In this document: piece after piece, positions 1-58,494 of the stretch
Numbering within the stretch: position 1 is the first letter of the stretch
Layout of the letters: every line of letters starts with the position of its first letter
Virus record (IMG/VR): IMGVR_UViG_3300024262_006558
Span: 324,595-388,594 of that record
Length of the DNA stretch: 64,000 bases
Direction: 5' to 3' (one strand)
Made by a program: the position numbers and the translations under genes
The notes under the pieces: generated by a model
Databases searched by the model: none
Told to the model about the DNA's origin: nothing
The model's input: only the letters and a program-made list of their open reading frames with translations

Positions 1-138
1 CCCCTGAGTTACTTTTACCTTCTTTATTCTATCCGTTGACATAATTTATAATTGTTATTTAACAAAGTTAAACAATAAATGGTGAATCCCAAAAAGAAGT
101 TCACCATTTATTTCATCAATGTTATATGTTGTTAATCA

Positions 139-5979: not shown

Positions 5980-7071
5980 TTAGTCCTCCACAAAAGGAGT
6001 GTTATAAGTTGGTCTCATTTCAGACCATAAAGCACGTTTTACCGATGTTTCAGATCCATATTTCAAAGATAAGAACAAAGATGCGTCTTTCTTACTAATT
6101 TTCCTAGCGTTTATAGCAAAATCTTTTCTATCAATCTTTCCTTCAGATATCATTTTGTCATTAAAAGCTTTAAAATCAGACTTTACCACTGCTAATCTTT
6201 TTTCATATTCTTTATCGAAATCATCGAGAGTCTTATGTATCCAGTCATAAAACTCATCAGGGACCTTGTCTAATATATCATCTAAAGTAAACTTCCATTC
6301 AGGATAATATTCTGGAGCAATTTCAAACATTCTCATTCTCCAAAGGTCCAAATTTGAAATTCCAGTCATTACTCTGTGAAGTCTTACATACTCGTCAAAC
6401 TTCACCTTCAATCTAAACCCGTTCTTAAAAAGAACAACAAATCCTTCTTCATTCTCCACCTCTAAAGCTTCCAACTCTTTGATATCCTTGATACCATCGT
6501 GCTTTTTCGCTATTGGCATACCAATATCCTCTAAAGGTAAGTCTTTACCTGTATCGGTATCTAAAACAGCTAATAGAACTAATTGCCTTTTACCTCTATA
6601 GTCCACAACTATTCTATTATTTGGATAGATTATCTCAAAAATGTAAGTCTTATCTATATTTTCCAATATAGATTTAGATGCGCTTGGATATAGCTCATCC
6701 AACATCTTAGACGCTTCTACAGCCTGGTCTGATGTGAATGATCCTCTAGAGGCCGCGTAAACCTTACCATTTAATACATAAGAAACCCCATAAGATCCAT
6801 CCATCTTAGTGAATACATCAAATGATTCATTAGGTATTTCTTCAGGCTTATGCTGTGACAGGTTAAAGAATTTAGGAAGACATTGAGATACAACTTCCCC
6901 GTTACCATTAAGTATTAAGCCGCGACATGATAATGTAACCTCATTCCAATAATCCTCAAACTGAGCCTTCTTAGAATAATTGTAAATATACAGATCAGCG
7001 CTAGGGTGTTTTTGTGACATCACATAACCCTCTTTGATCATTTCTTCAAAAAGCTCTTTATTAAATACCAT
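5980..7071 (-). CDS. T4 Rnl1-like RNA ligase
   Basis: CRGLI, PKFFN, KMDGS adenylation motif, ASRGSF, FEII, EGFV, RLKVK. Confidence 0.88.
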   Translation of the reverse strand: MVFNKELFEEMIKEGYVMSQKHPSADLYIYNYSKKAQFEDYWNEVTLSCRGLILNGNGEVVSQCLPKFFNLSQHKPEEIPNESFDVFTKMDGSYGVSYVLNGKVYAASRGSFTSDQAVEASKMLDELYPSASKSILENIDKTYIFEIIYPNNRIVVDYRGKRQLVLLAVLDTDTGKDLPLEDIGMPIAKKHDGIKDIKELEALEVENEEGFVVLFKNGFRLKVKFDEYVRLHRVMTGISNLDLWRMRMFEIAPEYYPEWKFTLDDILDKVPDEFYDWIHKTLDDFDKEYEKRLAVVKSDFKAFNDKMISEGKIDRKDFAINARKISKKDASLFLSLKYGSETSVKRALWSEMRPTYNTPFVED

Positions 7072-17208: not shown

Positions 17209-17470
17209 ATCTATCTTTTAAAACTTTTTTCTCACCATACCGATCTGTAAACACAATCAAGTCTGCTCTATTCATTCTATTCCTAGAGTCTACAGCCACA
17301 CCGCTTGTAAAGAACGACATACCTGTAGACCTATGGAAGTTAAAGTCATATAAATTAATATCATTTATATGCTTATATCTAGACCCTTTCACCAAATCAT
17401 TCTCAGTTAAATATATTGGTTCCCTATATGGTCTCCACTGTTTGACTGTGTGGTAAAAACGCTTTCTCAT
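17189..17470 (-). CDS. MRKxFY-leader protein; C-terminus resembles SF4 helicase/RecA-fold C-terminal strands
   Basis: MRKRFY; RADLIVF...KVLKDRFGD. Confidence 0.55.
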   Translation of the reverse strand: MRKRFYHTVKQWRPYREPIYLTENDLVKGSRYKHINDINLYDFNFHRSTGMSFFTSGVAVDSRNRMNRADLIVFTDRYGEKKVLKDRFGDYGQ

Positions 17471-18840: not shown

Positions 18841-19928
18841 TTTTTAATATATTTATAATTAAAACAACTCTAATTGTACACTATCAACTTACTATGTGGA
18901 ACCGTATAAAATTAGACTCAGAAGAAATAGTAAAATTATATCAATCTGGATTATCTGCAGCAAAGATAGGTAAAAAATTTAACACTAGCAATACTCCAAT
19001 ATACAGAATTTTAAAAGAAGAGGGAGTTCAACTGAGATCTTTTAGTGAAATGAATAGAAAATATAAAGTAAATGAAACCTATTTTGATGTAATAAACTCT
19101 CATGAAAAAGCTTATATTTTAGGTCTGATTTATGCTGATGGATGTAATAAGGTTTATAAAAATACAATAGACATTTCTTTACATAAAAAGGATGTTGACA
19201 TTCTAAAAAAAATAAAAAATATAATTCAGCCAGATAAACCTCTAGGTTTTAGTAAAAAAATGAATCAATATTCATTTAGAATTGAAAATAAACATATCTC
19301 TAAACAACTAGAGCTAAAAGGAGTTATTCAAGCAAAGAGTTTAAAAATAACATTTCCCACTAAAAAAATTGTTCCTAAAAAATTTGTTCATTCCTTTGTA
19401 CTTGGATATTTTGATGGTGATGGCAGCTTATCTATTAGTAAACAAAAATACAATAGAGGATCTATAAATATTACTGGAACTGAAAATTTTGTAGATCATA
19501 TAATTAGATTATCAGAAAATATAAAATGCAATTGGTATAAATATCAAAGATTCCCTGAAAGGAACAATAATAACTACACTATACAAATGTGTGGATCAGT
19601 TCAAAGTATTAGATTTCTAAAATGGATGTATAAAGATTCTCCTATTTTTATGCAAAGAAAACATGATACATTTAATAAACTTTTATTTACTCAATTAGAA
19701 AAGGAAAATAGAAAACAGGAAATTAAAAACAGAAAACAGGAAGATCAAAAAAAAAAAGAAGACAAATATATTAAATATAAAAAAGAGTATAATATGGTTA
19801 TTTCTCTTTATAAGAGAGGAAAATCTATAAGAGAAATACAAGATCTAATTGGTGTCGATCGTAGGAAATCAAGTAAATATATTAAAGAACAGGGTATTAA
19901 CATTAAAATGGGAGGATGGAATAATTAA
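18834..19928 (+). mobile_element. Free-standing LAGLIDADG homing endonuclease
   Basis: AYILGLIYADG and FVLGYFDGDG; terminal HTHs; antisense. Confidence 0.85.
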
Positions 19929-23592: not shown

Positions 23593-24624
23593 ATGGGAAA
23601 AAGGTGGAATAAAAAAGAAGAAGAATTTTTAAAAGAAAACTATCCTACTCAAGGACTAGAGTATTGTCATAACAAATTAGATAGAAATAAAAAGTCTATA
23701 ATATGTAAAACGAATAAATTAAACCTAAAATTAGAAGATAAGGTTAAATCTAAAATTCTAAAAAAGTTTCGCATTAAAGATGTGAAAGAGTATAAAATAA
23801 ACCCAAATCAATTCTTTAATATCAAATCTAAAAAAGTTGCTTATTTTTTAGGTTTTTTATGGGCTGATGGACATATAACCAAAACTGGGTATAATATTAA
23901 CATAGAAATTAAAAAAGAAGACATGAATTATGTTAAGCCTATATTTGATTCGTTAGGTATATGGGGATACTATGAAAGAAATCGAAACAATTGGGCTACT
24001 CAATCTAAAATAAGTACAAACAATTATCATATACACAAATTTTTAAAAGAAAATGATTACCATATTAAATCTTATGAATCTCCAGATAAAATTTTATCTA
24101 AAATACCTGAATATTTAAAACATTATTTTTTTAGAGGATGGAGTGATGGAGATGGTTGTTTCATAAGTAATCATAATTATCACAATTTTGTTTTAACTGG
24201 TGATAAGTCTCAAAAATGGAATGCAACAAAATTTTTAGTGCAAGAGTTGGGTATTAAAAATTATAGGATAATAATAAATGAGAATAAAAAAAGTTCCTCT
24301 TCATATCTGAAAATATCAAATAAAAAAGATATAGCACTTTTAGGAGATTACCTTTATCAAGGATTCAGTAAAGATAAAATAGGATTACCTAGAAAATATC
24401 ATACATACGAAACAATAAAGGAAAAATCTTCCAAAACTAGATACCTCACACCAGAACAAAGAAATAAAGCAATAGAAAATAACTTAGGAGCAAAAAATCC
24501 AGCTTACAAAAATGTTAATGTTGGTGTGATTACGGAAATGAGAGAAAAAGGTCAAACTCTCCAAAATATAGCTGATCATTTTAATGTTAGCATTTGGACT
24601 ATAAGAACAAGGTTAAAACCTTAG
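23593..24624 (+). mobile_element. LAGLIDADG homing endonuclease inserted antisense in the phosphoesterase gene
   Basis: AYFLGFLWADG and FFRGWSDGDG. Confidence 0.85.
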
Positions 24625-49021: not shown

Positions 49022-49023
49022 TG

Positions 49024-49107
49024 TACTCGAAGAGGGAGTCGAACCCTCATGCCCATAAGGGCGCTAGATCCTAAGTCTAGTGCGTCTACCAATTCCGCCA
49101 TCCGAGC
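49024..49107 (-). tRNA. tRNA-Leu(TAG), canonical type II
   Basis: CTAGA-CT TAG GA-TCTAG, long V arm, A73. Confidence 0.92.
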
Positions 49108-49213
49108 AAGTAAATAAATTTAAACTTTTTTTATGATATTATCAAATTATGCTAATACAAAAAAGCGAAGACTCACGCCCTCGCTTTTAAACTACTATTA
49201 TTTCAAAATGTGA

Positions 49214-49618
49214 TTATTTCTTCTTCAGCATTCTATAAATAGGTTCGAAACCTATTCCAAACGCTAATCTCAATATAACAAAGTCAATAACTAGATTATC
49301 TGTAATAGGTTGAAATAACACCATTCCAGCAAAGAAACATAAAAACATTGCAGCTTGAGCAAAATGCCACCCATCCGTTAATGAGACAAACACTGTCGCG
49401 CTTAATGGAAAACGTTCTTTATATTCTGGAGTAAATTTCCATAAATAATACCATCGCTTTTTATATTCTTTAACTCTTCTTCCCCCTGAGTTGATCTTCC
49501 ACTTTTTCTTCCAACTTTTGGATTTATTCCAGTAGTTGTTTAAGAAACCGTCTTCGGAGCTAACGTCCATTATGGCGTTTGCAGCTCCAGCAAATAATGC
49601 AAATAAAATTGACAACAT
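49214..49618 (-). CDS. Membrane protein
   Basis: Hydrophobic segments; TDGWH motif. Confidence 0.6.
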   Translation of the reverse strand: MLSILFALFAGAANAIMDVSSEDGFLNNYWNKSKSWKKKWKINSGGRRVKEYKKRWYYLWKFTPEYKERFPLSATVFVSLTDGWHFAQAAMFLCFFAGMVLFQPITDNLVIDFVILRLAFGIGFEPIYRMLKKK

Positions 49619-49626
49619 GTTTTTAT

Positions 49627-49812
49627 TTATAAATATGTTGTGTTTTTTGTGCCTCCAGAATTATAATATGTACTTCCAGAATTATAATATGTACTTCCAG
49701 AATTAGGTATATAAGGATCTATACACTCTCTTTCACAACTAAACAATGTCGGGATAAAAATTGTCCCCAATGTTACAATTGATGCTTTTTTTAAAAAATC
49801 TCTCCTATTCAT
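49627..49812 (-). CDS. Small Tat-signal lipoprotein
   Basis: MNRRDFLKK...LFSC; NSGSTYY repeats. Confidence 0.65.
   Translation of the reverse strand: MNRRDFLKKASIVTLGTIFIPTLFSCERECIDPYIPNSGSTYYNSGSTYYNSGGTKNTTYL
49654..49704. repeat. 21-nt tandem repeat inside Tat lipoprotein gene
   Basis: ccagaattataatatgtactt x2 plus partial copy. Confidence 0.8.
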
Positions 49813-49837
49813 AGTATATAAATATACTTATTTTTTG

Positions 49838-49917
49838 TACCCCTGGAGAGACTCGAACTCTCAAAAGCTCTGGGTTTGAACCAGTTATCTGTACCGATTT
49901 GAATAAGCCACAGGGGC
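49838..49917 (-). tRNA. Atypical tRNA with CAA (Leu) anticodon, short V arm, enlarged D region
   Basis: GCCCCTG/CAGGGGT acceptor, CTGG-TT CAA AC-CCAG, GAGAG-TTCGAGT-CTCTC. Confidence 0.75.
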
Positions 49918-49922
49918 GGGAT

Positions 49923-50165
49923 TTAAATTCTTCTTATTAGTTTTTTAAACTTAACACTTATTACTTTGATAGGGTTTATTTTATATGCATGAAAATACAA
50001 CCCAAAAAAGCAAGCTGATAACAGGTAAAAAAAGAAGGTTGTACTCCAGTAAGAATCTGTTAACTTCATCAGCATTGCGAATGCTATATCGTATCCTAGA
50101 GGGTTGAAGAATGTCCCCATTACTAATGCTAGTGTTCCGATCGTTTTTCTGTTCACCTTCATCAT
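49923..50165 (-). CDS. Small membrane protein
   Basis: FFNPLGYD...two TMs. Confidence 0.6.
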   Translation of the reverse strand: MMKVNRKTIGTLALVMGTFFNPLGYDIAFAMLMKLTDSYWSTTFFFYLLSACFFGLYFHAYKINPIKVISVKFKKLIRRI

Positions 50166-50202
50166 CCATTGTTTTCATATTTCGTTTAACATTTATTTAG
50201 TG

Positions 50203-50282
50203 TACCCCTGGAGAGACTCGAACTCTCAAAAGATCTGGGTCTAAGCCAGTTAGCTGTACCGATTTGCATAATCCACAGGGGC
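50203..50282 (-). tRNA. Atypical tRNA with TAG (Leu) anticodon, short V arm
   Basis: Paralog of 49838..49917; loop CT TAG AC. Confidence 0.75.
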
Positions 50283-50350
50283 ATATAATTATAAATAGTC
50301 GTGACTTGTATCCACGGATGTAACCTCTCAACTTTGCGTTCTATTCATTG

Positions 50351-50433
50351 TACCTCAGACAGGATTTGAACCTGCACGCCCATTACGGGCACTGGATTTT
50401 AAGTCCAGCGTGTCTGCGTTCCACCACCGAGGC
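50351..50433 (-). tRNA. tRNA-Leu(TAA), type II
   Basis: CTGGA-CT TAA AA-TCCAG, long V arm, A73. Confidence 0.9.
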
Positions 50434-50446
50434 GTGATGTTTGTTG

Positions 50447-50526
50447 TACCCCTGGCGAGACTCGAACTCGCAATAGCTCTGGGTTTAAGCCAGTTATCTG
50501 TACCGATTTGAATAAGCCACAGGGGC
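50447..50526 (-). tRNA. Atypical tRNA with TAA (Leu) anticodon, short V arm
   Basis: Paralog; loop CT TAA AC; T stem GCGAG/CTCGC covaries. Confidence 0.75.
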
Positions 50527-50531
50527 ATGCT

Positions 50532-50744
50532 TTATTTTTTTACTACCTTTTCAAAAAAGCTAACGGGCATGTCTCCGTTAATTTTCATAAACTCTTCTTC
50601 CGTTAAGCAATCACCATTAGCTTGCCAAGCCGCTTGGCAGAAATCTCTATATTCCCTACCATACTTTCTAGTGATATCCTTAAAGCTGATCTTAAAGTTG
50701 GATTCATCCGACTCAAAGTCAATAATTTCAAATATTCTTTTCAT
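50532..50744 (-). CDS. Hypothetical protein (start MKRIFE; longer ORF call overlaps tRNA)
   Basis: ATG 3 nt after tRNA-Leu(AAG) discriminator. Confidence 0.55.
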   Translation of the reverse strand: MKRIFEIIDFESDESNFKISFKDITRKYGREYRDFCQAAWQANGDCLTEEEFMKINGDMPVSFFEKVVKK

Positions 50745-50746
50745 AG

Positions 50747-50834
50747 TACCTCTACCCAGACTCGAACTGGGAACGTTTCTCATGTTTGCCACGGGTTCTT
50801 AGCCCGCCAGCTTTGCCAATTTGCTCATAGAGGT
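50747..50834 (-). tRNA. tRNA-Leu(AAG), A34
   Basis: GCGGG-CT AAG AA-CCCGT, long V arm, A73. Confidence 0.85.
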
Positions 50835-50843
50835 ATGAATAAA

Positions 50844-50962
50844 TGTTTCAAACAGGACTCGAACCTATATTGTTACGTACCAATCAAGTCAGAGTCAGAG
50901 CCTCCTTCAATATGAGGAAACTAACTTCCAACCTGTGCGCCTACCAATTTCGCCATTGAAAC
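50844..50962 (-). ncRNA. Type II tRNA-like RNA with ~34-nt insertion in anticodon loop
   Basis: GTTTCAA/TTGAAAC acceptor, Leu-like D arm, CAGGT/ACTTG stem enclosing 41 nt, V arm, T arm. Confidence 0.7.
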
Positions 50963-50967
50963 ATTTG

Positions 50968-51040
50968 AGCCTATGACAGGAATCGAACCTGCGACATCTT
51001 CCACACCAAGGAAGTGCTCTACCGACTGAGCTACATAGGC
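50968..51040 (-). tRNA. tRNA-Thr(GGT), G37
   Basis: CTTCC-TT GGT GT-GGAAG. Confidence 0.9.
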
Positions 51041-51045
51041 ATTAG

Positions 51046-51181
51046 TGGAACAGCGGGGAATCGAACCCCTTGCAAGATTTACATTTGACACCTTAAGATA
51101 TCAACAATACTCACTAGGATTTATCACCACTTAACCAAGAGCGATCTTAAGCTCACTAGAGGCTGCAGATAAAACTGCTCC
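51046..51181 (-). ncRNA. 136-nt tRNA-like RNA resembling a tmRNA tRNA-like domain (acceptor plus T arm, no D stem)
   Basis: GGAGCAG/CTGTTCC-A, GGGG-TTCGATT-CCCC, TGCAG/TTGCA closing stem. Confidence 0.65.
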
Positions 51182-51187
51182 GTTTAG

Positions 51188-51259
51188 AGCTACATGCAGG
51201 AATCGAACCCGCCTCTGAAGCTTACAAGGCTCCTGCATCACCGACAATGCTTATGTAGC
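51188..51259 (-). tRNA. tRNA-Thr(TGT)
   Basis: GGAGC-CT TGT AA-GCTTC. Confidence 0.9.
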
Positions 51260-51272
51260 AAGAATAATTTTG

Positions 51273-51403
51273 GGGAGGGGGCTGGACTCGAACCAGCGAC
51301 CTTCTGCTTAACAGGCAATTAGAAGGAAGACAAAACATAGCCTTATTTTTAAGGGGATCATTAAATCTTTTAAGATGCTCTAACCAACTGAGCTACCCCT
51401 CCC
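51273..51403 (-). tRNA. tRNA-Asn(GTT) interrupted by 56-nt insertion in 5' strand of anticodon stem
   Basis: TC[56 nt]TGC-CT GTT AA-GCAGA; intact D, T and acceptor arms; G-1 and C73. Confidence 0.78.
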
Positions 51404-51417
51404 ATTTATTATACTTG

Positions 51418-51505
51418 AGGTACTAGTAAGATTCGAACTTACGATGGAGGATCTCTCCTCGACAGATTTGCAGCCTGCCCCTTTCGCCCACTCAGGCATA
51501 GTACC
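51418..51505 (-). tRNA. tRNA-Cys(GCA) with long variable arm
   Basis: GCAGG-CT GCA AA-TCTGT; V arm GAGGA-GAGA-TCCTC; U73. Confidence 0.85.
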
Positions 51506-51516
51506 ATATATTTTTG

Positions 51517-51590
51517 TGGAGGCACTCGGTAACGATCCGAGATCTCTGGGACTTCAATCCAGCGCATAGACCAATCTTTGCTATGCCTCC
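51517..51590 (-). tRNA. tRNA-Phe(GAA) copy 1, G37
   Basis: CTGGA-TT GAA GT-CCCAG; T loop ATCGTTA. Confidence 0.85.
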
Positions 51591-51604
51591 CTATTATTTT
51601 ATTG

Positions 51605-51789
51605 TGGAGGAAGACGGAATCGAACCGCCGACCAACCCCTCCTACGGGGCCACTCTACCAAGACACCTTTTCAAAACCACCATACAACTTAAACACTTTC
51701 CAAAACCATTATTCATGACTAATGGCTAATTACTTATGTCGTTCTCTAGCTGAATCTACTCCGTTGAAATGTCACTGAGTTACTCCTCC
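51605..51789 (-). ncRNA. tRNA-like RNA with ~113-nt insertion in D loop and irregular anticodon loop (GTAGGA)
   Basis: GGAGGAG/TTCCTCC acceptor, ACTC/GAGT D stem, insert closed by GACATTT/AGGTGTC, intact T arm. Confidence 0.7.
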
Positions 51790-51846
51790 ATGGGTCCCGT
51801 TATTTTCTAGACAGCAAGCACGGGACCACACCGCTGTAAGACGTTG

Positions 51847-51921
51847 TGCTGTGTACTGGATTCGAACCAGTGATCTTCTCGGCTTCAACGAAACGCTTTA
51901 GACCAACTAAGCTAACACAGC
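51847..51921 (-). tRNA. tRNA-Phe(GAA) copy 2, G37
   Basis: TTTCG-TT GAA GC-CGAGA. Confidence 0.9.
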
Positions 51922-51928
51922 ATTTTTG

Positions 51929-52002
51929 GGTGATGGACGGGCTACGACCCCGCGACCTTTGGCGCCACAAGCCAATGCTCTACCAACTGAGCTACCACCA
52001 CC
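51929..52002 (-). tRNA. tRNA-His(GTG) copy 1, encoded G-1
   Basis: TTGGC-TT GTG GC-GCCAA; G-1:C73. Confidence 0.88.
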
Positions 52003-52071
52003 ATATTCATAAACTGAGGAATTCCTAAGTTTACGATTTGTAATACCAATACGTCAAAGAACTATTCTTTG

Positions 52072-52144
52072 GGTGTCGATGGGGTTCGAACCCTACCATC
52101 CAGATTCACAGTCTGGGACTCTCTCCAAGTGAGCTACCGACACC
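52072..52144 (-). tRNA. tRNA-His(GTG) copy 2, encoded G-1
   Basis: CCAGA-CT GTG AA-TCTGG; G-1:C73; irregular T stem. Confidence 0.85.
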
Positions 52145-52432: not shown

Positions 52433-52448
52433 GTCTTTTATGAAATTA

Positions 52449-53340
52449 TTTTAAATTTCCTTTCAAAATAATGGTATAAACACTTTATGTTCAAGTATAT
52501 AATATGAACATCATGTTGTGATTTCCTTTCAAAATAATGGTATACATACTGCGTCTAATATATTTAGGCATGCCTCAAATGTTGTGATTTCCTTTCAAAA
52601 TAATGGTATACATACTTTTCTACTCTTTATACTGAAGAAGCAAAGGGTTGTGATTTCCTTTCAAAATAATGGTATACATACTTTAAGCTTTTACAGGCCT
52701 CATCTTACGACTGTTGTGATTTCCTTTCAAAATAATGGTATACATACTATGGGTACATAGTTCCTCTCTCATACTTCGGTTGTGATTTCCTTTCAAAATA
52801 ATGGTATACATACTGCGTCTAATATATTTAGGCATGCCTCAAATGTTGTGATTTCCTTTCAAAATAATGGTATACATACTTTCGACATGAATACATCGCC
52901 TTTCAAAGTGGTTGTGATTTCCTTTCAAAATAATGGTATACATGCTGATTGAGCTTATGGGTGTTATGGATTCTTCGTTGTGATTTCCTTTCAAAATAAT
53001 GGTATAAATACTCTATCTTTGGAACAATAAACGATAAGGGGTTGTGATTTCCTTTCAAAATAATGGTATACATACTATTTGGCATCGAATTCCTGTTTGA
53101 GTGATAGTTGTGATTTCCTTTCAAAATAATGGTATACATACTATTTAAATACTTGCACATTAATATATACCCGTTGTGATTTCCTTTCAAAATAATGGTA
53201 TACATACTAAAGCCTGTTGACTATATGAGGCAACTAGTGTTGTGATTTCCTTTCAAAATAATGGTATACATACTTAAAAACAAAAAATGGCTTTTGCGAT
53301 ACTCGTTGTGATTTCCTTTCAAAATAATGGTATACATACT
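52449..53340 (-). CRISPR. CRISPR array: 13 repeats of 36 nt (52515..53340) plus a degenerate distal repeat; 30-nt spacers
   Basis: Plus-strand repeat GTTGTGATTTCCTTTCAAAATAATGGTATACATACT, period 66 (one 28-nt spacer); degenerate copy at 52449..52484 implies leader at right and minus-strand transcription. Confidence 0.97.
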
Positions 53341-53454
53341 AGGCCCTATCATAATCGATTAATAGATAGGTGATTATAAAGTATATTGAGTTAAAAAACT
53401 GGAGACTTATTATATAGTAACATATATTTACGATCAGTTTTCTCATTATAATTT
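53341..53454 (-). promoter_or_regulatory. CRISPR leader
   Basis: AT-rich 114 nt between cas6 stop and first repeat; cctatc...gatagg hairpin. Confidence 0.6.
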
Positions 53455-54183
53455 CTATTTAGCCAGGTATTGTCTATTATTTTCAATGTTGAATATTGAT
53501 CCAAACCCTATACCAGTAGAGCTTCCAATTCCAATAGCATATAAGGTATCCATAACTTTTTTATTTGCAAAAATTTCTAAATTACATTGATTTGCTATGT
53601 TAAATACTCTTTTTCCATTTATTGATTGTTTAATATCAATATGTCGAGTTCTATTTCTTTTTGATTTCCTTACTTTTACTTTAAATTTATCTAATTTCAA
53701 ATCGGAATTAACTTTACTCAACTTGTTTATAATATGCTTATGGAGCTCCTCTTCAAAATCATCATCATTTAAAGTATGTATAATGTCAGATTTATTCTTT
53801 GTGGTCTTTAAAAAAATTGGAGATAACATACCTACATGATTCCATCCATTTTTGAAATTATCTATTCTAAAATCATATCCATCATATTTCATACCATAAC
53901 ACAATTCAATCGTATTTGCATTGATAATAAGAAAATTAATTATGGCAGATATGAATTCTGCATCCAGAGATGAAACAGTAATATAGCATCCGCTACTCAT
54001 ATCTAAGAAATTCTCACCTTTAATCTTTTTTCCGCCCTGGATTGTAGATAAAGAATAGTTTGAGGATCTATCATGATAATGATTATTTTTTCCTAAACAT
54101 TTATGTAAGAAAGATATTACATGATATTGATTATTAAAAGGAACTCCCTCTTTGGTGCCTTTAAATTTAATTTTTATACGCAT
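53455..54183 (-). CDS. cas6: CRISPR-associated endoribonuclease Cas6
   Basis: C-terminal GIGSSTGIGFG loop; YSLSTIQGG; LSPI. Confidence 0.9.
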   Translation of the reverse strand: MRIKIKFKGTKEGVPFNNQYHVISFLHKCLGKNNHYHDRSSNYSLSTIQGGKKIKGENFLDMSSGCYITVSSLDAEFISAIINFLIINANTIELCYGMKYDGYDFRIDNFKNGWNHVGMLSPIFLKTTKNKSDIIHTLNDDDFEEELHKHIINKLSKVNSDLKLDKFKVKVRKSKRNRTRHIDIKQSINGKRVFNIANQCNLEIFANKKVMDTLYAIGIGSSTGIGFGSIFNIENNRQYLAK

Positions 54184-55157
54184 AAAATTTCTGTTTTTAA
54201 ATCACTATTAATGTCTCCAACTCTTTTAAAATCATCAAAATTTAGATCTCTATCTTTATAGATACCCTTTATTTTTACGAAACCACCGTCTAAAATCGTA
54301 GCACACCCTTTACTGTTTCTAACTCTTTCAATATCTTCTTCAGAAAAAGGAATGTATAATATACCATTATATATCTCAGTATAGCCAATGCTCTTAGGAA
54401 CATTTAACCTAGTATCTTTTTTCTTGTTTGAATTAGTTATTAACTCTTTTGCTTTTGTATCGCTTACTTTTGCAATATAATTATAGAACTGTGTTAAGCC
54501 TCTTTCTTTTGCTAATGTAAAGAAATTTTTATATTCATTTTCTATATCTCCAGTAACTCCATTTACAAATATTTTTTGTAATTTTAATAAGAGTTCTATA
54601 CATGTATACTGTTTCTTAATATTCTCTATTGTATCCACATTTAAAACCACCTTAGATAACTCCATCAAGGAATAAAAAACATCATATGTACCTAGTATAT
54701 CTTTACAATATCTCCTTATAGTTTCATAATTTATATTATTATATTTAGAAGTTGAATTCCAATGAGCCTTTCTAAGTGAAGTAACCTCAGTCCTCACATG
54801 TCTATTGCCACTCTTATCAATATTTACATTAGAAATATCTAATTTTAGATACGAATCTTCTGCAACGCTCATCAAATCTTCACGATTTTTATAATGAACC
54901 TCCCTTAGAGAAGGCTTTGGTCTATCACCGACCAAAACCTGTAGAAGATTATTTATTTGCTTTTTAGTAATAGGTTCTTCAAAATATTTAGTGATAACTT
55001 TTTTGGGTATATTATTTTCCTTGTCAGCTGCTTGAACAACTGTTCTTGATCTAAATTTACCATTTTCAATAACTAAATCTTTTTCATTTTTGTTACCATA
55101 TTTATTAACTCTAAATAATTTAGCGTTCTTGAACTCTACTACCAAATAGTTTTTCAT
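54174..55157 (-). CDS. cas5fv: Cas5fv-like Cascade subunit
   Basis: INNLLQVLVGDRPK, TEVTSLRK and C-terminal GCATILDGG align with recalled Cas5fv blocks; position between cas7fv and cas6. Confidence 0.65.
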   Translation of the reverse strand: MKNYLVVEFKNAKLFRVNKYGNKNEKDLVIENGKFRSRTVVQAADKENNIPKKVITKYFEEPITKKQINNLLQVLVGDRPKPSLREVHYKNREDLMSVAEDSYLKLDISNVNIDKSGNRHVRTEVTSLRKAHWNSTSKYNNINYETIRRYCKDILGTYDVFYSLMELSKVVLNVDTIENIKKQYTCIELLLKLQKIFVNGVTGDIENEYKNFFTLAKERGLTQFYNYIAKVSDTKAKELITNSNKKKDTRLNVPKSIGYTEIYNGILYIPFSEEDIERVRNSKGCATILDGGFVKIKGIYKDRDLNFDDFKRVGDINSDLKTEILCV

Positions 55158-56230
55158 TTCTTTTTTGATTTAGTTTTTTTAGATTCTGATTTATCCTCTT
55201 TTTCAGCATAAACTTTCATCGCTTCACGTAATTCTTTTGATATTTTTTCATCTGCCTCAGAGTAAAATATTTCAAAATCGCACTCAAAATCTTCAATATC
55301 TTTTCTTTTTTCTAAAGAAACCCAACCGTTTTCTTTATCAAAAACATCATCAATTGGATCATATACCAATTTATATTCCAATTTAGATGTTTTTGCAAAT
55401 GCATGAGTTCTTTTTACTTGGGCCTCCATCATCATTTCCAATATTCTTCTTACTAAGAAGTTAATATCATCGTTTGATAATAAACATCCATACTCAGGAG
55501 TTTTATCTGAACCTGAGTTAAGCGTAAAGTAATTTATGTCAGAATTAAATGATGGTAATTTACTTTTTAAAAAATATTTGAATTTTTCAAAGTCATCGGG
55601 ATTAATCATCTGTCTATCATACAATAAATCAAATGATAAGAATTGCATAGATTGTATATCAATATCACCCTCACTCATATAAGTGATCTCTCCAACTTCT
55701 TCTTTTTTGTGCAAGGTTATACCAGATTTGTCTTTATCACCTGTTTCTTTTTCTGATCTTCTTGAGTGAAAACCTAAGACACTTTTGGCGTCATTAGTTT
55801 GTTCAGCATATGATAAATTAAGGCAACTCTTCTTTTTCTCACCCGCTCCACCGCTAATAGTTGTCATAAATCCTCTAACTAACATTTCAGGCGTAGCATA
55901 GTACATTAATTTCAAATCTTTGTTTGAATTTATACTTGAATTATAACCTTCATCAGGAAAAATGGCGCTCTTTAAGCATTGGGAGGAAATAGCAATTTTA
56001 TAATTAGCCGCCTTTACTTCTTCACCTTTGTCATTTATAACAATGTTTTCATAGATATTTTTTTTGGCATATGAAACGTTATCATTTAAATCAATTAAAT
56101 GATTTAAACCATCAACTGGTTTACCTTTATTCCAAAAAGCTAACGTTTGTTTTTTATCATCGTAATTAACAATTCCTCGACCTTCTAATTTCCATCTAAG
56201 TAGAATGTTTTTAACTTTTCTTTTCATCAT
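55154..56230 (-). CDS. cas7fv: Cas7fv-like Cascade backbone subunit
   Basis: LEGRGIVNYD, ISSQCLKSAIF, LVRGF, TYMSEGDIDIQSMQFLSFDLLYDR, EYGCLLSNDD align with recalled Shewanella Cas7fv. Confidence 0.8.
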   Translation of the reverse strand: MMKRKVKNILLRWKLEGRGIVNYDDKKQTLAFWNKGKPVDGLNHLIDLNDNVSYAKKNIYENIVINDKGEEVKAANYKIAISSQCLKSAIFPDEGYNSSINSNKDLKLMYYATPEMLVRGFMTTISGGAGEKKKSCLNLSYAEQTNDAKSVLGFHSRRSEKETGDKDKSGITLHKKEEVGEITYMSEGDIDIQSMQFLSFDLLYDRQMINPDDFEKFKYFLKSKLPSFNSDINYFTLNSGSDKTPEYGCLLSNDDINFLVRRILEMMMEAQVKRTHAFAKTSKLEYKLVYDPIDDVFDKENGWVSLEKRKDIEDFECDFEIFYSEADEKISKELREAMKVYAEKEDKSESKKTKSKKK

Positions 56231-56271
56231 TTTTTATATTTAAGAGTAGTAAGTTTATATTTTTTTCCCAA

Positions 56272-58494
56272 TTAAACAAATGTTTCTAACATTTTCTTAT
56301 CAATTAACCCATAAGTTTCGCTATAAACATTATTATAAGTGATGTATGGAGTGTTGCTAAACACTGCACATCTCCTGAAAGAATCTATTGTCATCTTATC
56401 GTTTTTGTATTTATTCCCATAATCAAACCTATCATCGCCTTTTAAAGATTTAATAGTCTTCTTTATGTTTGACAATGTTTTACTGGTCTCTTTAAAATGC
56501 TGATCAAATCCATATGTAACACTTTTAGTGAAAGGGTCTGACCAAGTACCACACTCTCTCTTGCATATATAAAATACTTGCGCATTTGAACATCTCAACT
56601 TATTAGATCCAGATTTAATAATATCACTTTCAGATTTAGAAGACTTTGTATACACAAAGCTAATTTTTTTCAAATTAGCTAAAGACTCTCTGTGTACATT
56701 ACTTAAATACTTACTGAAAGCATTTACTTCTTTCACGGAATACTCATTATATAACTCATAGAATTCATCTAGAGTTATATACTTTATGTCTTTTGATTCA
56801 AGAAATGTATACCAACTATCCATTAACTCTGTATTGTATAATTTGGAAACAGTTTCCTTCTCTATATGATTGTGCGATTTAAAGATGTTTATAGTACACT
56901 CCTCTGATATATCACCCCAGCGATTGACTCTACCAATTCTTTGAGCTGTAGCTAAATGAGACATAACAGATTCATATAAATGATTGAAGCTTATATCGAT
57001 AGAAGCTTGTATTATTAACGTAGAGCATAAAGAATTCTTTACTATATTTCTTGAGCTTTTTTTATTGTATGTTTTATAGATAGAATCAAACATCTCTTCT
57101 TTTTTCTTATTTTCAAATTTGCTATGAAATAAGTCTAATTTATTATTCTCAAATTTAAATCTTTGAGAATTTGAAACATTATTAAAAACATATAAAGAGT
57201 TATCTTTAACTTCTACATTACCATAATCTATTAAGCTTACTTTATACTCTTTAGAGTGAGCTGAGGGATAGTGCGTATTTTCAGATGGTAATATTTTAGT
57301 ACATTTTAATGTTGGATCTATTATAGAGTGTATATTTATTGGAGTAGCACTAAGAAGCATAGTCTTGCTATTGGTAAACATTGTTCTCATCTTAAGCATA
57401 TTTGTGAACAAGGAAAAGTAAGCTTCTCTAGTTATGAACTCATGGTATTCATCGAAAACAACATCACATTTTGCAATATAATAAAGCCTTGATAAAATAG
57501 GGTTTTTTAGGTTTGGAGATAGAAAATTATCTATATTGGTAATTATAATATCTGAATTAAACTCTTCTGTATCATTGTGATTTTTCTTTTTGGTTTCTGA
57601 TGTTAAAAATAACTCAACTTTTAAATTGCAATTTATATTTTCCAACTCAGACAAAATGCTATAATAAACAGATTCAGCAACAGTGTTTCTAGGGCATACC
57701 CAAATGAGTTTTTTGTCAGAAGATTTTATATTCCACAATAAACCAGTTAAAGTTTTTCCAAATCCTGCAGCTGCATTAACTATTAAATTTTTTGATTTAT
57801 CTTCTGATATTTTTATTTGATTGTCTAACCTTTCATTCTTATCGAAAGTATCTAGATTATATAAGGGATTTTCTCTATATATATTTGATTGAGAGCTTGT
57901 GTCGATCATTCTATCTGCAGATACTAGAATAGTTCTGAAGAACATTTTTTTGATATCTTCATTTATATCATCTCTAAGCACGTTTTCACCGTAATATTTT
58001 GGCAACACATAATCAACAGTTACTTCTTTTAGATAATCTTTACTTAATACCGTTGTTAAATACTTCTTCATAATATTTTTATCACTAATAGATATGGTAT
58101 CTAAAATAGATTCAGAAGTAGGTAAAGTTTTAGGATAATTTTTTATTCCATGATGATATAAAACACAATCAGTCACAAAATGTTTATAGCTAGAATCAAA
58201 TTTTAAATATTTCTCCAAAAAAGCCCATCCAATTTCATTATGTAAAAAAACATCTTTCCTAGTTTCATTTTTGCTTTTTAAATTTTCCTGAAATGCTGTT
58301 GTGCATTTACCTATATCATGCAATAAAGCTGATACTTTTACAATATCGATAAAAACTTTTTTCTCATCTGCATCAAAATAGTAATCACTTTCTTCTAAAT
58401 ACATTTCTTCTAATATATACAAAGCTCTCTCTGCAACATATGAAGAGTGTTCTATTAATGTGACACCATTGCTTTTTGCTAAAATTTTTTTCAT
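56272..58494 (-). CDS. cas3: Cas3 HD nuclease-helicase (stand-alone, no Cas2 fusion)
   Basis: LLHDIGK, HN..G, YHHG, SADR; AAAGFGKT, DEYH, SATP, QASIDIS, QRIGRVNRWG. Confidence 0.93.
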   Translation of the reverse strand: MKKILAKSNGVTLIEHSSYVAERALYILEEMYLEESDYYFDADEKKVFIDIVKVSALLHDIGKCTTAFQENLKSKNETRKDVFLHNEIGWAFLEKYLKFDSSYKHFVTDCVLYHHGIKNYPKTLPTSESILDTISISDKNIMKKYLTTVLSKDYLKEVTVDYVLPKYYGENVLRDDINEDIKKMFFRTILVSADRMIDTSSQSNIYRENPLYNLDTFDKNERLDNQIKISEDKSKNLIVNAAAGFGKTLTGLLWNIKSSDKKLIWVCPRNTVAESVYYSILSELENINCNLKVELFLTSETKKKNHNDTEEFNSDIIITNIDNFLSPNLKNPILSRLYYIAKCDVVFDEYHEFITREAYFSLFTNMLKMRTMFTNSKTMLLSATPINIHSIIDPTLKCTKILPSENTHYPSAHSKEYKVSLIDYGNVEVKDNSLYVFNNVSNSQRFKFENNKLDLFHSKFENKKKEEMFDSIYKTYNKKSSRNIVKNSLCSTLIIQASIDISFNHLYESVMSHLATAQRIGRVNRWGDISEECTINIFKSHNHIEKETVSKLYNTELMDSWYTFLESKDIKYITLDEFYELYNEYSVKEVNAFSKYLSNVHRESLANLKKISFVYTKSSKSESDIIKSGSNKLRCSNAQVFYICKRECGTWSDPFTKSVTYGFDQHFKETSKTLSNIKKTIKSLKGDDRFDYGNKYKNDKMTIDSFRRCAVFSNTPYITYNNVYSETYGLIDKKMLETFV

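What the first reader, a model, noticed from the sequence alone, without database searches (positions are those of the whole stretch)
51273..51403. tRNA-Asn with 56-nt insertion in the anticodon stem and His-like G-1:C73
Seen: removing 56 nt restores a perfect TCTGC/GCAGA stem with loop CT-GTT-AA. The insert ends can pair (TTAAAAG with CTTCTAA). The discriminator is C with an opposing 5' G. Known: introns at 28/29-29/30 occur in some archaea, not bacteria; Asn tRNAs normally have G73 and G-1:C73 is a His identity element. Inference: a spliced tRNA, possibly with altered charging.
Basis: partly seen in the sequence, partly recalled or inferred. Interest (0 to 1): 0.65.

Follow-up and report, generated by a model that had tools for sequence, protein, structure and literature searches.

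The report
tRNA carrying a Ro-like-protein RNA module
A huge phage has a tRNA-shaped gene whose anticodon stem is interrupted by 56 bases, and those bases are a rearranged copy of a widespread, uncatalogued RNA motif that always sits beside a Ro60-like protein gene, so it is probably a protein-docking module rather than an archaeal-type intron.

Summary
On the minus strand, 51402-51273 is a full tRNA (Rfam 49.3 bits) interrupted by 56 nt (51372-51317). Removing them restores UCUGC/GCAGA with loop CUGUUAA. G-1 (51403) faces C73, as in the two tRNA-His genes of the same array.

The window is the end of a 388.6-kb phage record. The insert is neither a bulge-helix-bulge (BHB) intron nor a group I intron. 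It is a circular permutation of a motif, GGCUA-[10-bp helix]-UCCUUCUA-loop-[helix]-NUUUCC plus a basal helix. The motif has strong covariation and no Rfam match. It occurs in more than 200 phage and bacterial loci. In 48 of 51 clean bacterial loci it lies next to a ~700-aa protein gene. The phage's copy of that protein folds as a Ro60-like ring plus a TerD domain. Its gene lies directly upstream of a second tRNA (Gly-like) with the same insert.

Best reading (0.45): a tRNA-shaped, Y-RNA-like ligand of that protein, comparable to YrlA-Rsr. Main rival (0.35): a true intervening sequence, cut out and sealed by the phage's Pnkp and Rnl1/Rnl2 ligases. Splicing is unproven. The acceptor features do not fit Asn identity.

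The parts
51403..51403 (-). G-1, opposite the discriminator C73
   Evidence: Direct reading. The same upstream 'AUG|G' plus C73 occurs only at the two tRNA-His genes of the array.
51373..51402 (-). 5' part of the tRNA body: acceptor 5' strand, D arm, A26, and U27-C28-U29 of the anticodon stem
   Evidence: Rfam RF00005 alignment; direct reading.
51317..51372 (-). The 56-nt intervening module, a circularly permuted copy of the Ro-like-protein-associated RNA motif
   Evidence: It shares GGCUAUG-N6-CUUCCUUCUA with the insert of the Gly-like tRNA. It carries 21 of the family's 23 invariant alignment positions, in permuted order (direct reading). The MFE fold recovers helices P1 and P2.
51359..51368 (-). 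P2 3' strand, AGAUUUAAUG
   Evidence: Pairs with 51337-51328 at 8 of 10 positions (two U-U). It takes the place of AG-N6-CR in the family.
51341..51358 (-). Internal-loop 3' side AUCC (51358-51355) and P1 closed by a loop: CCUU (51354-51351), AAAAAU (51350-51345), AAGG (51344-51341)
   Evidence: Equivalent to NUUU + CC-NN...NN-GG of the family. Here the basal helix is closed by a hexaloop instead of carrying the RNA ends.
51328..51340 (-). CUA (51340-51338) and P2 5' strand UGUUUUGUCU (51337-51328)
   Evidence: Invariant GG-CUA-UG...CU of the family.
51317..51327 (-). Invariant UCCUUCUA (51327-51320) plus linker AUU (51319-51317)
   Evidence: Invariant in all 46 aligned units. CCUUCU can also pair with A41-G46 of the tRNA in the MFE fold.
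51273..51316 (-). 3' part of the tRNA body: G30-C31, loop CUGUUAA, GCAGA, variable loop, T arm, acceptor 3' strand, C73
   Evidence: A contig from an RNA library starts exactly at 51316 and matches without a mismatch down to 51264.
50844..50962 (-). Second interrupted tRNA-like gene of the array. Its insert is about 50890-50925 and holds a degenerate copy of the module (AGUUAG-UUUCC-UC...GA-GG-CUC-...CUGACU) without UCCUUCUA
   Evidence: Rfam tRNA 34.2 bits. ARAGORN -i gives Ser(GGA) with a 36-nt intron. The module parse is by inspection only.
5980..7071 (-). T4 Rnl1-type RNA ligase, a candidate sealing enzyme only if the module is excised
   Evidence: Pfam PF09511, 51.7 bits. The matching Pnkp (309 aa, kinase + HAD_PNKP) ends at the window's left edge, G000 323707-324636.

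Best explanation
The gene encodes a tRNA-shaped RNA that carries, grafted into the 5' strand of its anticodon stem, a circularly permuted copy of a conserved two-helix RNA module. Everywhere else this module accompanies the gene of a ~700-aa protein. The predicted structure of that protein is a Ro60-like helical ring plus a TerD domain.

Shown: the module family is real (covariation). It is linked to that protein gene in bacteria and phages. This phage has the protein, whose gene lies immediately upstream of a second tRNA-like gene with the same module. In other family members the apical loop of the module holds tRNA-like domains (T arm, closed acceptor, D arm), which is the architecture of YrlA Y RNAs.

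Inferred: the transcript is cut out of the tRNA array by RNase P and RNase Z like its neighbours, and then works as a Y-RNA-like ligand. The module docks the Ro-like protein. The tRNA body, with an 8-bp His-type acceptor end and an exposed GUU anticodon hairpin, mimics a tRNA to bring that protein to tRNA-handling partners, within the phage's RNA quality-control or repair toolkit. In the Asn-like gene the insert branches from one strand only, so all five anticodon-stem pairs can still form as a three-way junction.

The identity of the module is about 0.85 likely. The claim that it stays in the mature RNA is about 0.45.
For: (1) The Asn and Gly inserts share GGCUAUG-N6-CUUCCUUCUA. Both show the full motif in permuted order.
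(2) On 46 units, 94.6% of cells pair against 66.6% when shuffled; covariation is 0.741 against 0.179, with 0 of 500 shuffles as high, and slid controls give 0.12-0.17.
(3) In 48 of 51 clean bacterial loci the protein gene follows the motif on the same strand, at a median 58 nt. tblastn finds the protein in 58 motif-bearing phage loci and in this genome at G000 295692-297653(-).
(4) The AF2 model has pLDDT 86.8. TerD matches at Z 15.5. Ro60 of phage phiLo matches at Z 9.3 over 301 aa and D. radiodurans Rsr at Z 8.3 over 312 aa. These are the top long matches in an all-PDB search.
(5) tRNA-like apical domains occur in family members: L081 (YrlA model 34 bits), L042 and L013.
(6) All uninterrupted tRNAs of the array that have a strong discriminator rule fit bacterial identity rules (Leu A73 three times, Phe A73 twice, His G-1:C73 twice, Cys U73). 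The two Thr genes have U73 with G1:C72 and C2:G71, which does not conflict. The three interrupted genes do not fit: Asn-like C73 with G1-C72, Gly-like G73 with U2:A71 and U3:A70, Ser-like A73.
(7) The phage has no EndA or RtcB.
(8) The operon order is Ro-like gene, then Gly-like tRNA with module, then a tRNA-like RNA, then a DEDDh exonuclease gene.
Against: The split anticodon stem (UCU...AGA and GC...GC) and the canonical loop CUGUUAA are intact, which a stable chimera does not obviously need. The module enters at different places in the three genes (29/30, 32/33, 37/38); this looks more like introns than like one fixed RNP geometry, and in the Gly-like gene it opens the anticodon loop. A contig from an RNA library begins exactly at the first base of the 3' exon. 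The phage has a full healing-and-sealing set: Pnkp, Rnl1-like and Rnl2-like. Lak megaphages have tRNA introns that are present or absent between near-identical genomes (PMC6784885). The Ro60 likeness rests on a predicted fold at Z 8-9, with no sequence or Pfam TROVE signal. Binding of the module by the protein has not been tested.
Confidence: 0.45

Rival explanations
1. It is a true intervening sequence. The precursor is cut at both junctions by an endonuclease not yet identified, possibly recruited by the Ro-like protein. The halves are healed and sealed by the phage's T4-type Pnkp and Rnl1-like or Rnl2-like ligases. The products are a ~74-nt decoding tRNA (anticodon GUU, His-type acceptor end) and a free Y-like hairpin. 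This would resemble the archaeal tRNA-Trp intron that contains a C/D box guide RNA.
For: Removal restores a perfect anticodon arm. The insertion sites differ among the phage's interrupted tRNAs. Pnkp, Rnl1-like and Rnl2-like genes are present. An RNA-library contig starts exactly at G30 (51316), and another starts within 1 nt of the 5' end of tRNA-Leu. There is precedent for unexplained tRNA introns in Lak megaphages, and other conserved inserts occur in tRNA-like genes of two further huge phages. The phage has no other GUU or UCC tRNA gene.
Against: No spliced junction was seen in any run. No endonuclease candidate was found, and EndA and RtcB are absent. The acceptor identity of all three interrupted genes does not match their apparent anticodons. 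For the Gly-like and Ser-like genes the 7-nt 'loops' can be produced in silico by free choice of cut sites, so only the Asn-like case is strong. A contig end at the junction can also come from a reverse-transcriptase stop at a three-way junction or from a branch in the assembly graph.
Confidence: 0.35
2. It is a tRNA pseudogene, disrupted by a recent insertion of a small mobile copy of the motif and without function.
For: The motif occurs in tandem, multi-copy arrays and in many genomes. No expression data exist for this phage.
Against: There are no terminal inverted repeats or target duplications. The Asn and Gly copies have diverged with compensatory changes in P2 and different P1 loops, yet they keep all but two (Asn) or one (Gly) of the 23 invariant positions. 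The tRNA body shows no decay (49.3 bits). The Gly copy sits inside an operon next to the partner protein gene.
Confidence: 0.08
3. It is an archaeal- or eukaryal-type non-canonical tRNA intron, recognised through a bulge-helix-bulge motif and removed by EndA plus RtcB.
For: Position 29/30 is known for archaeal non-canonical introns (established knowledge). The insert ends can pair at 6 of 7 positions.
Against: No pair of 3-nt bulges separated by a 4-bp helix can be drawn. The MFE fold shows the module's own P1 and P2 helices instead. EndA and RtcB are absent from the phage. The virus has bacterial hallmarks. The insert belongs to a bacterial and phage RNA family.
Confidence: 0.02
4. The module is a small self-cleaving or self-splicing ribozyme that excises itself.
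For: It has a compact, highly conserved core with invariant single-stranded stretches. It lies close to tRNAs, as the HDV-like theta ribozymes of gut phages do (PMC10879173).
Against: No Rfam ribozyme family matches it at E up to 1. The fold is a simple two-helix hairpin without the pseudoknots of HDV-like ribozymes. Its strict linkage to one protein gene argues for a protein partner. In bacteria it lies 4-60 nt upstream of the start codon, and no cleavage rationale is evident there.
Confidence: 0.05

Closest known systems
YrlA-type bacterial Y RNAs with Ro60/Rsr (Rfam RF02553; Chen et al. 2014, PMC4201824)
   Same: Both are modular non-coding RNAs with a conserved protein-binding stem plus a tRNA-like domain. 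Both are encoded next to the gene of a ring-shaped Ro-type protein, are often present in several copies, and occur in bacteria and phages. Permuted arrangements of the tRNA-like part are known (Yrn1 versus YrlA). One family member (L081) matches the tRNA-like part of the YrlA model at 34 bits.
   Different: The stem module has a different sequence and loop layout (GGCUA / UCCUUCUA / NUUUCC) and does not match RF02553. The partner protein has no Pfam TROVE signal, and it carries TerD where Ro60 carries vWA. In this gene the tRNA part is complete, with free acceptor ends and an anticodon hairpin, and it is the module that is closed by a loop.
'Enigmatic' tRNA introns of Lak megaphages (Devoto et al. 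2019, PMC6784885)
   Same: Both are huge phages with tRNA genes interrupted by 50-115-nt inserts that no Rfam family explains. Gly(TCC) and Phe(GAA) are among the affected genes in both.
   Different: The Lak inserts are reported at 37/38, contain a tRNA-like minihelix, and lack GGCUA...UCCUUCUA. Here the strongest case sits inside the anticodon stem and is a protein-linked motif.
Archaeal and eukaryal BHB introns and permuted tRNA genes (EndA/RtcB; Cyanidioschyzon merolae)
   Same: In both, one RNA signal appears as an insert in ordinary tRNAs and as the flanks of permuted tRNA-like sequences. Non-canonical positions such as 29/30 occur in both.
   Different: There is no BHB geometry, no EndA and no RtcB here. 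The context is bacterial and phage. Excision has not been shown.
T4 Pnkp-Rnl1 tRNA repair and yeast Trl1 healing-and-sealing
   Same: The phage encodes Pnkp, an Rnl1-type ligase and an Rnl2-type ligase. This is the chemistry that joins tRNA halves broken in the anticodon loop.
   Different: In T4 the pathway repairs damage made by a host nuclease. A role in intron removal here is only an inference.
tRNA-His identity set and histidine-accepting viral tRNA-like structures
   Same: G-1 paired with C73 gives an 8-bp acceptor stem, as in the phage's own two tRNA-His genes.
   Different: The anticodon is GUU, not GUG. Charging has not been tested.

Membership tests
tRNA (Rfam RF00005) | Cloverleaf scoring above the gathering threshold of 29 bits | tested here: met
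   49.3 bits, model positions 1-71, with a 67-nt local insert in the anticodon arm.
Bacterial tRNA-Asn | GUU anticodon in a CUGUUAA loop | tested here: met
   Direct reading of 51314-51308. The same loop occurs in 12 of 13 phage tRNA-Asn genes used for comparison.
Bacterial tRNA-Asn | G73 discriminator and U1-A72 (AsnRS and GatCAB identity; established knowledge) | tested here: not met
   This gene has C73, G1-C72 and G-1. In the 13 reference genes the first base is U in 12 and A in 1, never G, and at least 12 have G73 followed by an encoded CCA.
tRNA-His identity set | G-1 opposite C73 | tested here: met
   G at 51403 and C at 51273. Both tRNA-His genes of the array have the same layout.
tRNA-His identity set | GUG anticodon | tested here: not met
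   The anticodon is GUU.
BHB (archaeal/eukaryal) tRNA intron | Two 3-nt bulges separated by a 4-bp helix at the exon-intron junctions | tested here: not met
   Inspection of both junctions. The MFE fold shows the insert's own P1 and P2 helices and an insert/3'-exon helix. No formal BHB scanner was run.
BHB (archaeal/eukaryal) tRNA intron | Splicing endonuclease EndA and RtcB ligase available | tested here: inconclusive
   PF01974 and PF01139 are absent from the 388.6-kb phage record, and the controls worked. The host is unknown.
Group I intron in tRNA | A ribozyme core of about 200 nt or more (P3-P9), inserted in the anticodon loop | tested here: not met
   The insert is 56 nt, lies in the stem, and has no Rfam intron hit at E up to 1.
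Ro-like-protein-associated RNA motif (model R1, defined here) | Invariant GG-CUA-UG...CU-UCCUUCUA ... AG...CR-NUUU-CC with helices P1 and P2 | tested here: met
   All segments are present in permuted order. The Asn copy carries 21 of the 23 invariant alignment positions and the Gly copy 22 of 23. P1 and P2 are recovered by the MFE fold.
Ro-like-protein-associated RNA motif (model R1, defined here) | Full-length match to covariance model R1 | tested here: not met
   Only a 12.2-bit partial hit (G000 375897-375924), as expected for a circular permutation. A standard unit elsewhere in the genome scores 34.5 bits.
Ro-like-protein-associated RNA motif (model R1, defined here) | Partner ~700-aa protein gene in the same genome, adjacent | tested here: met
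   The gene is present at G000 295692-297653(-), adjacent to the Gly-like copy. The Asn-like copy lies about 78 kb away.
Y RNA / YrlA (RF02553) with Ro60 | Match to the YrlA model | tested here: not met
   No hit in the window. One relative (L081) scores 34 bits against a cut-off of 69, through its tRNA-like part only.
Y RNA / YrlA (RF02553) with Ro60 | Partner protein has a TROVE domain | tested here: not met
   PF05731 is absent from the genome and the protein has no Pfam hit. The only likeness is in fold: Z 9.3 and 8.3 to Ro60 structures.
Y RNA / YrlA (RF02553) with Ro60 | The RNA is bound by the protein | not testable with these tools
   This needs EMSA, CLIP or co-purification.
Lak-type phage tRNA intron | Insert at 37/38 with an internal acceptor/T-arm minihelix | tested here: not met
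   The Lak intron sequences in Table S6 lack the motif and have a different layout.

The most novel reading that the evidence does not exclude
Bacterial viruses may have their own protein-dependent tRNA splicing pathway. In it, a Y-RNA-like module embedded in the anticodon arm is recognised by a Ro60-like/TerD protein, cut out, and the tRNA halves are sealed by phage Pnkp and Rnl1/Rnl2. One precursor would then yield both a free Y-like RNA and a decoding tRNA that joins a His-type acceptor end to an Asn anticodon. The same signal would also flank permuted tRNA-like sequences in other phages and bacteria.
Probability: 0.3. Interest if true: 0.9.

Novelty: new variant of a known kind. Interest (0 to 1): 0.75.

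Why it matters
Three things follow.

(1) The analysis brings out an RNA family with very strong covariation, in at least ten bacterial phyla and many large phages. It is absent from Rfam 15. It is tied to a widespread ~700-aa protein of unknown function (NCBIfam NF041916 relatives, PHROG 33734) that now appears to be a Ro60-like ring with a TerD domain. If so, Ro/Y-RNA-type RNPs would be far more common than TROVE-based searches suggest.

(2) It gives the first concrete handle on at least one class of the 'enigmatic' inserts in huge-phage tRNA genes: a defined module, a candidate protein partner, and candidate sealing enzymes. All of these can be tested in E. coli.

(3) A tRNA-shaped RNA with a His-type acceptor end and an Asn anticodon is either a deliberate tRNA mimic or a mis-decoding tRNA. 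Either would bear on how large phages manipulate or protect the translation apparatus.

Tried and rejected
- Known ribozymes and other Rfam families: no hit on the insert or on clean motif units at E up to 1. The HDV-like theta ribozyme fold was checked by eye and does not fit.
- Mobile element (MITE or IS200-type ends): no terminal repeats or target duplication.
- Promoter or Shine-Dalgarno-type DNA signal: rejected because the helices covary.
- CRISPR-repeat mimic: the array repeat shares only AUUUCC with the motif, on the opposite strand, so this is judged to be chance.
- SRP RNA likeness of the reverse complement: rejected by eye and by Rfam.
- Cas6 as the cutting enzyme: the junctions do not resemble the repeat.
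- Relatives of this very gene: exact exon patterns found nothing in viral contigs and only the source contig in metagenomes. A second assembly is 100% identical over 12.4 kb. So there is no with-or-without-insert comparison.
- Other permuted (intron-like) copies: two pattern scans of viral contigs gave only tandem arrays or YrlA-like units.
- Reads: the two RNA runs hold mostly other organisms' tRNAs. Uninterrupted Asn tRNAs of other organisms align with a net 56-nt gap, but these are not spliced products of this gene.
- Conserved neighbours of the protein gene other than the RNA: none.
- PADLOC: no hit for the protein. PDB by sequence or by profile: nothing.
The exons were examined by reference only, and the spliced form is argued from direct reading.

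Full report
WHERE THE WINDOW LIES. The window is the last 64 kb of a 388,594-bp IMG/VR virus record (G000:C1:324595-388594), about 33% G+C. The record was cut from a 494-kb subsurface-metagenome contig. Its genes are those of a large bacterial virus:
- NAD-dependent DNA ligase, ClpP and a protein kinase.
- A type I-F-like CRISPR-Cas system: Cas3, Cas7fv-like, Cas6 and a 14-repeat array.
- A monomeric PheRS-like enzyme and RNA-repair enzymes.

On the minus strand between 49,023 and 52,144 lies an array of at least 13 tRNA or tRNA-like genes.

THE OBSERVATION. It is correct. On the minus strand the 5' exon is 51402-51373, the insert is 51372-51317 (56 nt) and the 3' exon is 51316-51273. Without the insert the anticodon arm reads UCUGC-CUGUUAA-GCAGA. 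Rfam's tRNA model matches end to end at 49.3 bits, keeping the outer three stem pairs and skipping 67 nt. G-1 (51403) faces C73 (51273). In the whole array only the two tRNA-His genes share this 'AUG|G...C73' layout.

WHAT THE INSERT IS. ARAGORN with introns allowed found three further interrupted tRNA-like genes in the genome:
- G000 295538-295672 (Gly-like, 61-nt insert at 32/33).
- G000 295386-295531.
- Window 50844-50962.

The Asn and Gly inserts share GGCUAUG-N6-CUUCCUUCUA, and a third copy follows a tRNA-like gene at G000 264858-264880. A scan of IMG/VR with that pattern returned 80 loci, mostly from contigs of 100-460 kb, often in tandem and beside tRNAs. These came from Pseudomonadota, Bacillota, Acidobacteriota, Cyanobacteriota/Melainabacteria, Planctomycetota, Bacteroidota, Chloroflexota, Myxococcota and others.

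The unit reads 5'-N5-GG-CUA-[UG-N6-CU]-UCCUUCUA-loop-[AG-N6-CR]-NUUU-CC-N5-3'. The bracketed strands form a 10-bp helix (P2). The flanks, including GG/CC, form a basal helix (P1).

Covariation on 46 units:

| Measure | Observed | Control |
|---|---|---|
| Cells that pair | 94.6% | 66.6% (shuffled) |
| Cells changed on both sides | 233 | 68 (shuffled) |
| Covariation score | 0.741 | 0.179 (0 of 500 shuffles as high) |
| Covariation score, partner slid | - | 0.12-0.17 |

The six central P2 pairs and the five outer P1 pairs were not constrained by my selection pattern. No Rfam 15 family matches these units. A covariance model built from them (R1) finds 104 units in 53 phage sources. They typically form arrays of 2-5. 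Their apical loops are variable and sometimes hold hairpins or tRNA-like domains.

THE INSERT IS A CIRCULAR PERMUTATION OF THAT UNIT. In the Asn-like gene the order is: exon | UAAA | AGAUUUAAUG (P2 3' strand) | AUCC | CCUU-AAAAAU-AAGG (P1, here closed by a loop) | CUA | UGUUUUGUCU (P2 5' strand) | UCCUUCUA | AUU | exon.

The Gly-like gene has the same order with different, compensating P2 sequences. In effect the tRNA body replaces the apical loop, and the RNA ends move from P1 to the acceptor stem. The thermodynamic fold of the precursor recovers P1 and P2 on its own (z = -3.1). R1 gives only a 12-bit partial hit there, as expected for a permutation. The single standard unit of this genome (G000 264810-264887) scores 34.5 bits.

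THE PARTNER PROTEIN. In 48 of 51 clean bacterial loci a ~700-aa ORF follows the RNA on the same strand (median gap 58 nt, sometimes 4-16 nt). The same family is found by tblastn in 58 of the motif-bearing phage loci. In this genome it lies at G000 295692-297653(-), an ORF of 691-699 aa depending on the start codon.

What the libraries say about the family:
- NCBIfam NF041916 ('MXAN_6230/SCO0854 family RING domain-containing protein') at E 1e-147, below its cut-off.
- No Pfam or PADLOC hit. PHROG 33734 is of unknown function.
- No PDB relative by sequence or profile. Atlas clusters are named only 'TerD family'.

An AlphaFold model built on 38 homologues has pLDDT 86.8 and pTM 0.85. Residues ~458-630 are a TerD fold (Z 15.5). 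Across residues ~140-690 the best long matches are all Ro60 proteins:

| Structure | Z | Residues aligned |
|---|---|---|
| Thermus phage phiLo Ro60 | 9.3 | 301 |
| D. radiodurans Rsr | 8.3 | 312 |
| Xenopus Ro60 | 6.2 | 330 |
| Ro60 with misfolded pre-5S rRNA (9nep) | 6.0 | 323 |

They hold this place both among Foldseek's candidates and in an unbiased scan of 48,161 chains. In that scan every other hit above Z 5 covers no more than about 120 residues. Z of 8-9 for a helical repeat is suggestive, not proof. In this phage the order is promoter-like site, Ro-like gene, hairpin, Gly-like tRNA with module, a further tRNA-like RNA, then a DEDDh exonuclease gene.

HOW IT MOST LIKELY WORKS. The closest known system is Ro60/Rsr with YrlA-type Y RNAs. 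These have a conserved protein-binding stem plus a tRNA-like domain and are encoded beside the protein, in bacteria and phages (PMC4201824; jumbo-phage review PMC7824862). Members of the present family show that architecture outright. L081 has a T arm, a closed acceptor and a D arm in the apical loop, and it hits the YrlA model through that part. L042, L013 and bacterial L106 are similar. My leading reading is therefore that the Asn-like gene encodes a permuted member. It would be a tRNA-shaped RNA that is matured like its neighbours and docks the Ro-like protein through the module.

Three facts favour a stable chimera over a decoding tRNA:
- The uninterrupted tRNAs of the array fit, or do not conflict with, bacterial identity rules. 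The three interrupted ones do not fit. Thirteen tRNA-Asn genes from other motif-bearing phages all begin with a base other than G (U in 12), and at least 12 have G73 followed by an encoded CCA. This gene has G1-C72, C73, G-1 and no CCA.
- No splicing endonuclease or RtcB is encoded.
- The Gly-like copy sits in an operon with the protein.

THE MAIN RIVAL. The module may be a real intervening sequence. The evidence for this:
- The split stem and the canonical Asn loop are intact.
- The module enters at three different positions in the three genes.
- The phage encodes a T4-type Pnkp (G000 323707-324636), an Rnl1-type ligase (window 5980-7071) and an Rnl2-type ligase (G000 ~319.3-320.1 kb).
- In a marine metatranscriptome run, a 157-nt contig begins exactly at 51316, the first base of the 3' exon. 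It matches 53 nt without a mismatch, and a second contig begins within 1 nt of the 5' end of tRNA-Leu.

That contig is a single low-depth record. A reverse-transcriptase stop or a graph branch at the junction would look the same. No junction-spanning record was listed. Lak megaphages set a precedent for unexplained phage tRNA introns, but their inserts are unrelated in sequence. Two other huge phages carry a different conserved 46-47-nt insert in an Arg-like tRNA. I put the chimera at 0.45 and excision at 0.35. Pseudogene, ribozyme and BHB-intron readings share the rest.

LIMITS. Several things were not available:
- No relative of this particular gene, with or without the insert, was found.
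- Protein-RNA binding, processing and charging are untested.
- The Ro60 likeness rests on a predicted structure.
- The module parse of the window's second interrupted gene (50844-50962) is by eye.

VERDICT. The finding is real and leads well beyond its coordinates: to an uncatalogued RNA family, to its Ro-like protein partner, and to tRNA genes that carry it. The suspicion of unusual charging is reasonable.

Noticed in passing
window 52439-58494: The phage encodes a type I-F-like CRISPR-Cas system directly beside the tRNA array, all on the minus strand: Cas3 (HD + helicase) at 56272-58494, Cas7fv-like at 55154-56230, an unassigned 327-aa ORF at 54174-55157, and Cas6 at 53455-54183. The array at 52439-53340 has 14 repeats with a 66-nt period.
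   Followed up: partly
window 50844-50962 (-): A second interrupted tRNA-like gene (Rfam 34.2 bits; ARAGORN gives Ser(GGA) with a 36-nt insert). Its insert looks like a degenerate copy of the same module (UUUCC, closed P1, GG-CUC, 6-bp P2) but lacks UCCUUCUA. The discriminator A73 does not fit Ser.
   Followed up: partly
G000 295386-295531 (-) = L001:5387-5532: A tRNA-like gene right after the Gly-like one. Its acceptor, D and T arms and long variable arm are good, but a ~54-nt insert of another kind replaces a proper anticodon loop. A DEDDh exonuclease gene follows (L001:4883-5371).
   Followed up: partly
G000 264700-265000 (-) = L002: Two tandem copies (~196-nt period) of a tRNA-like gene with a ~22-nt hairpin inserted in the D loop and an odd anticodon arm. 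The first copy is followed by the genome's only standard unit of the motif (264810-264887).
   Followed up: no
window 51418-51505 (-): The 'tRNA-Cys(GCA)' gene is a type II tRNA (88 nt, long variable arm) with U73. That is an unusual body for a Cys acceptor.
   Followed up: no
window 49023-52144 (-): None of the tRNA genes encodes CCA, and each is followed by CAA or CA after the discriminator. tRNA genes of other phages that carry the motif mostly do encode CCA. One Leu tRNA has an A34 anticodon (AAG).
   Followed up: no
window ~51600-51660 (-) and 50447-50526 (-): Further tRNA-like pieces that ARAGORN does not call: an acceptor/T-arm minihelix (GGAGG...GGCGGUUCGAUUCCGUC..CCUCC) between the two Phe genes, and an 80-nt Rfam tRNA hit (33.9 bits) next to tRNA-Leu(UAA).
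   Followed up: no
window 1-42, 5980-7071, 7682-8791, 17467-18840: An RNA-repair and translation kit: the end of a T4-type Pnkp gene at the window edge, an Rnl1-type RNA ligase, a monomeric PheRS-like enzyme (alongside two tRNA-Phe genes), and an RlaP nucleotidyltransferase. An Rnl2-type ligase lies just outside the window (G000 ~319.3-320.1 kb).
   Followed up: partly
window 18834-19928 (+) and 23593-24624 (+): Two LAGLIDADG-type homing-endonuclease-like ORFs lie on the plus strand amid minus-strand genes. The first overlaps the end of the RlaP gene by a few bases. They may be free-standing or intron- or intein-borne.
   Followed up: no
L233:13832-13950 (G002) and L241:5461-5582 (G005): Two other huge phages carry an Arg(CCG)-like tRNA gene with a 46-47-nt insert that is better conserved than the exons. 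The insert contains a T-arm-like hairpin (GAGGUUCGAUUCCUC). This is a different class of phage tRNA insert, closer to the Lak type.
   Followed up: no
window 52439-53340 (+ strand reading): Read on the plus strand, the CRISPR repeat starts GUUGUGAUUUCC. This resembles the motif's 'CR-AUUUCC' segment. The array is probably transcribed from the other strand, so I take it for chance.
   Followed up: partly
bacterial loci L084-L203 (e.g. L098, L029, L169): In bacteria and some phages the last RNA unit ends only 4-16 nt before the start codon of the Ro-like/TerD gene. Many units are followed by U runs. The RNA may therefore also act as a leader or attenuator of its partner's gene.
   Followed up: partly
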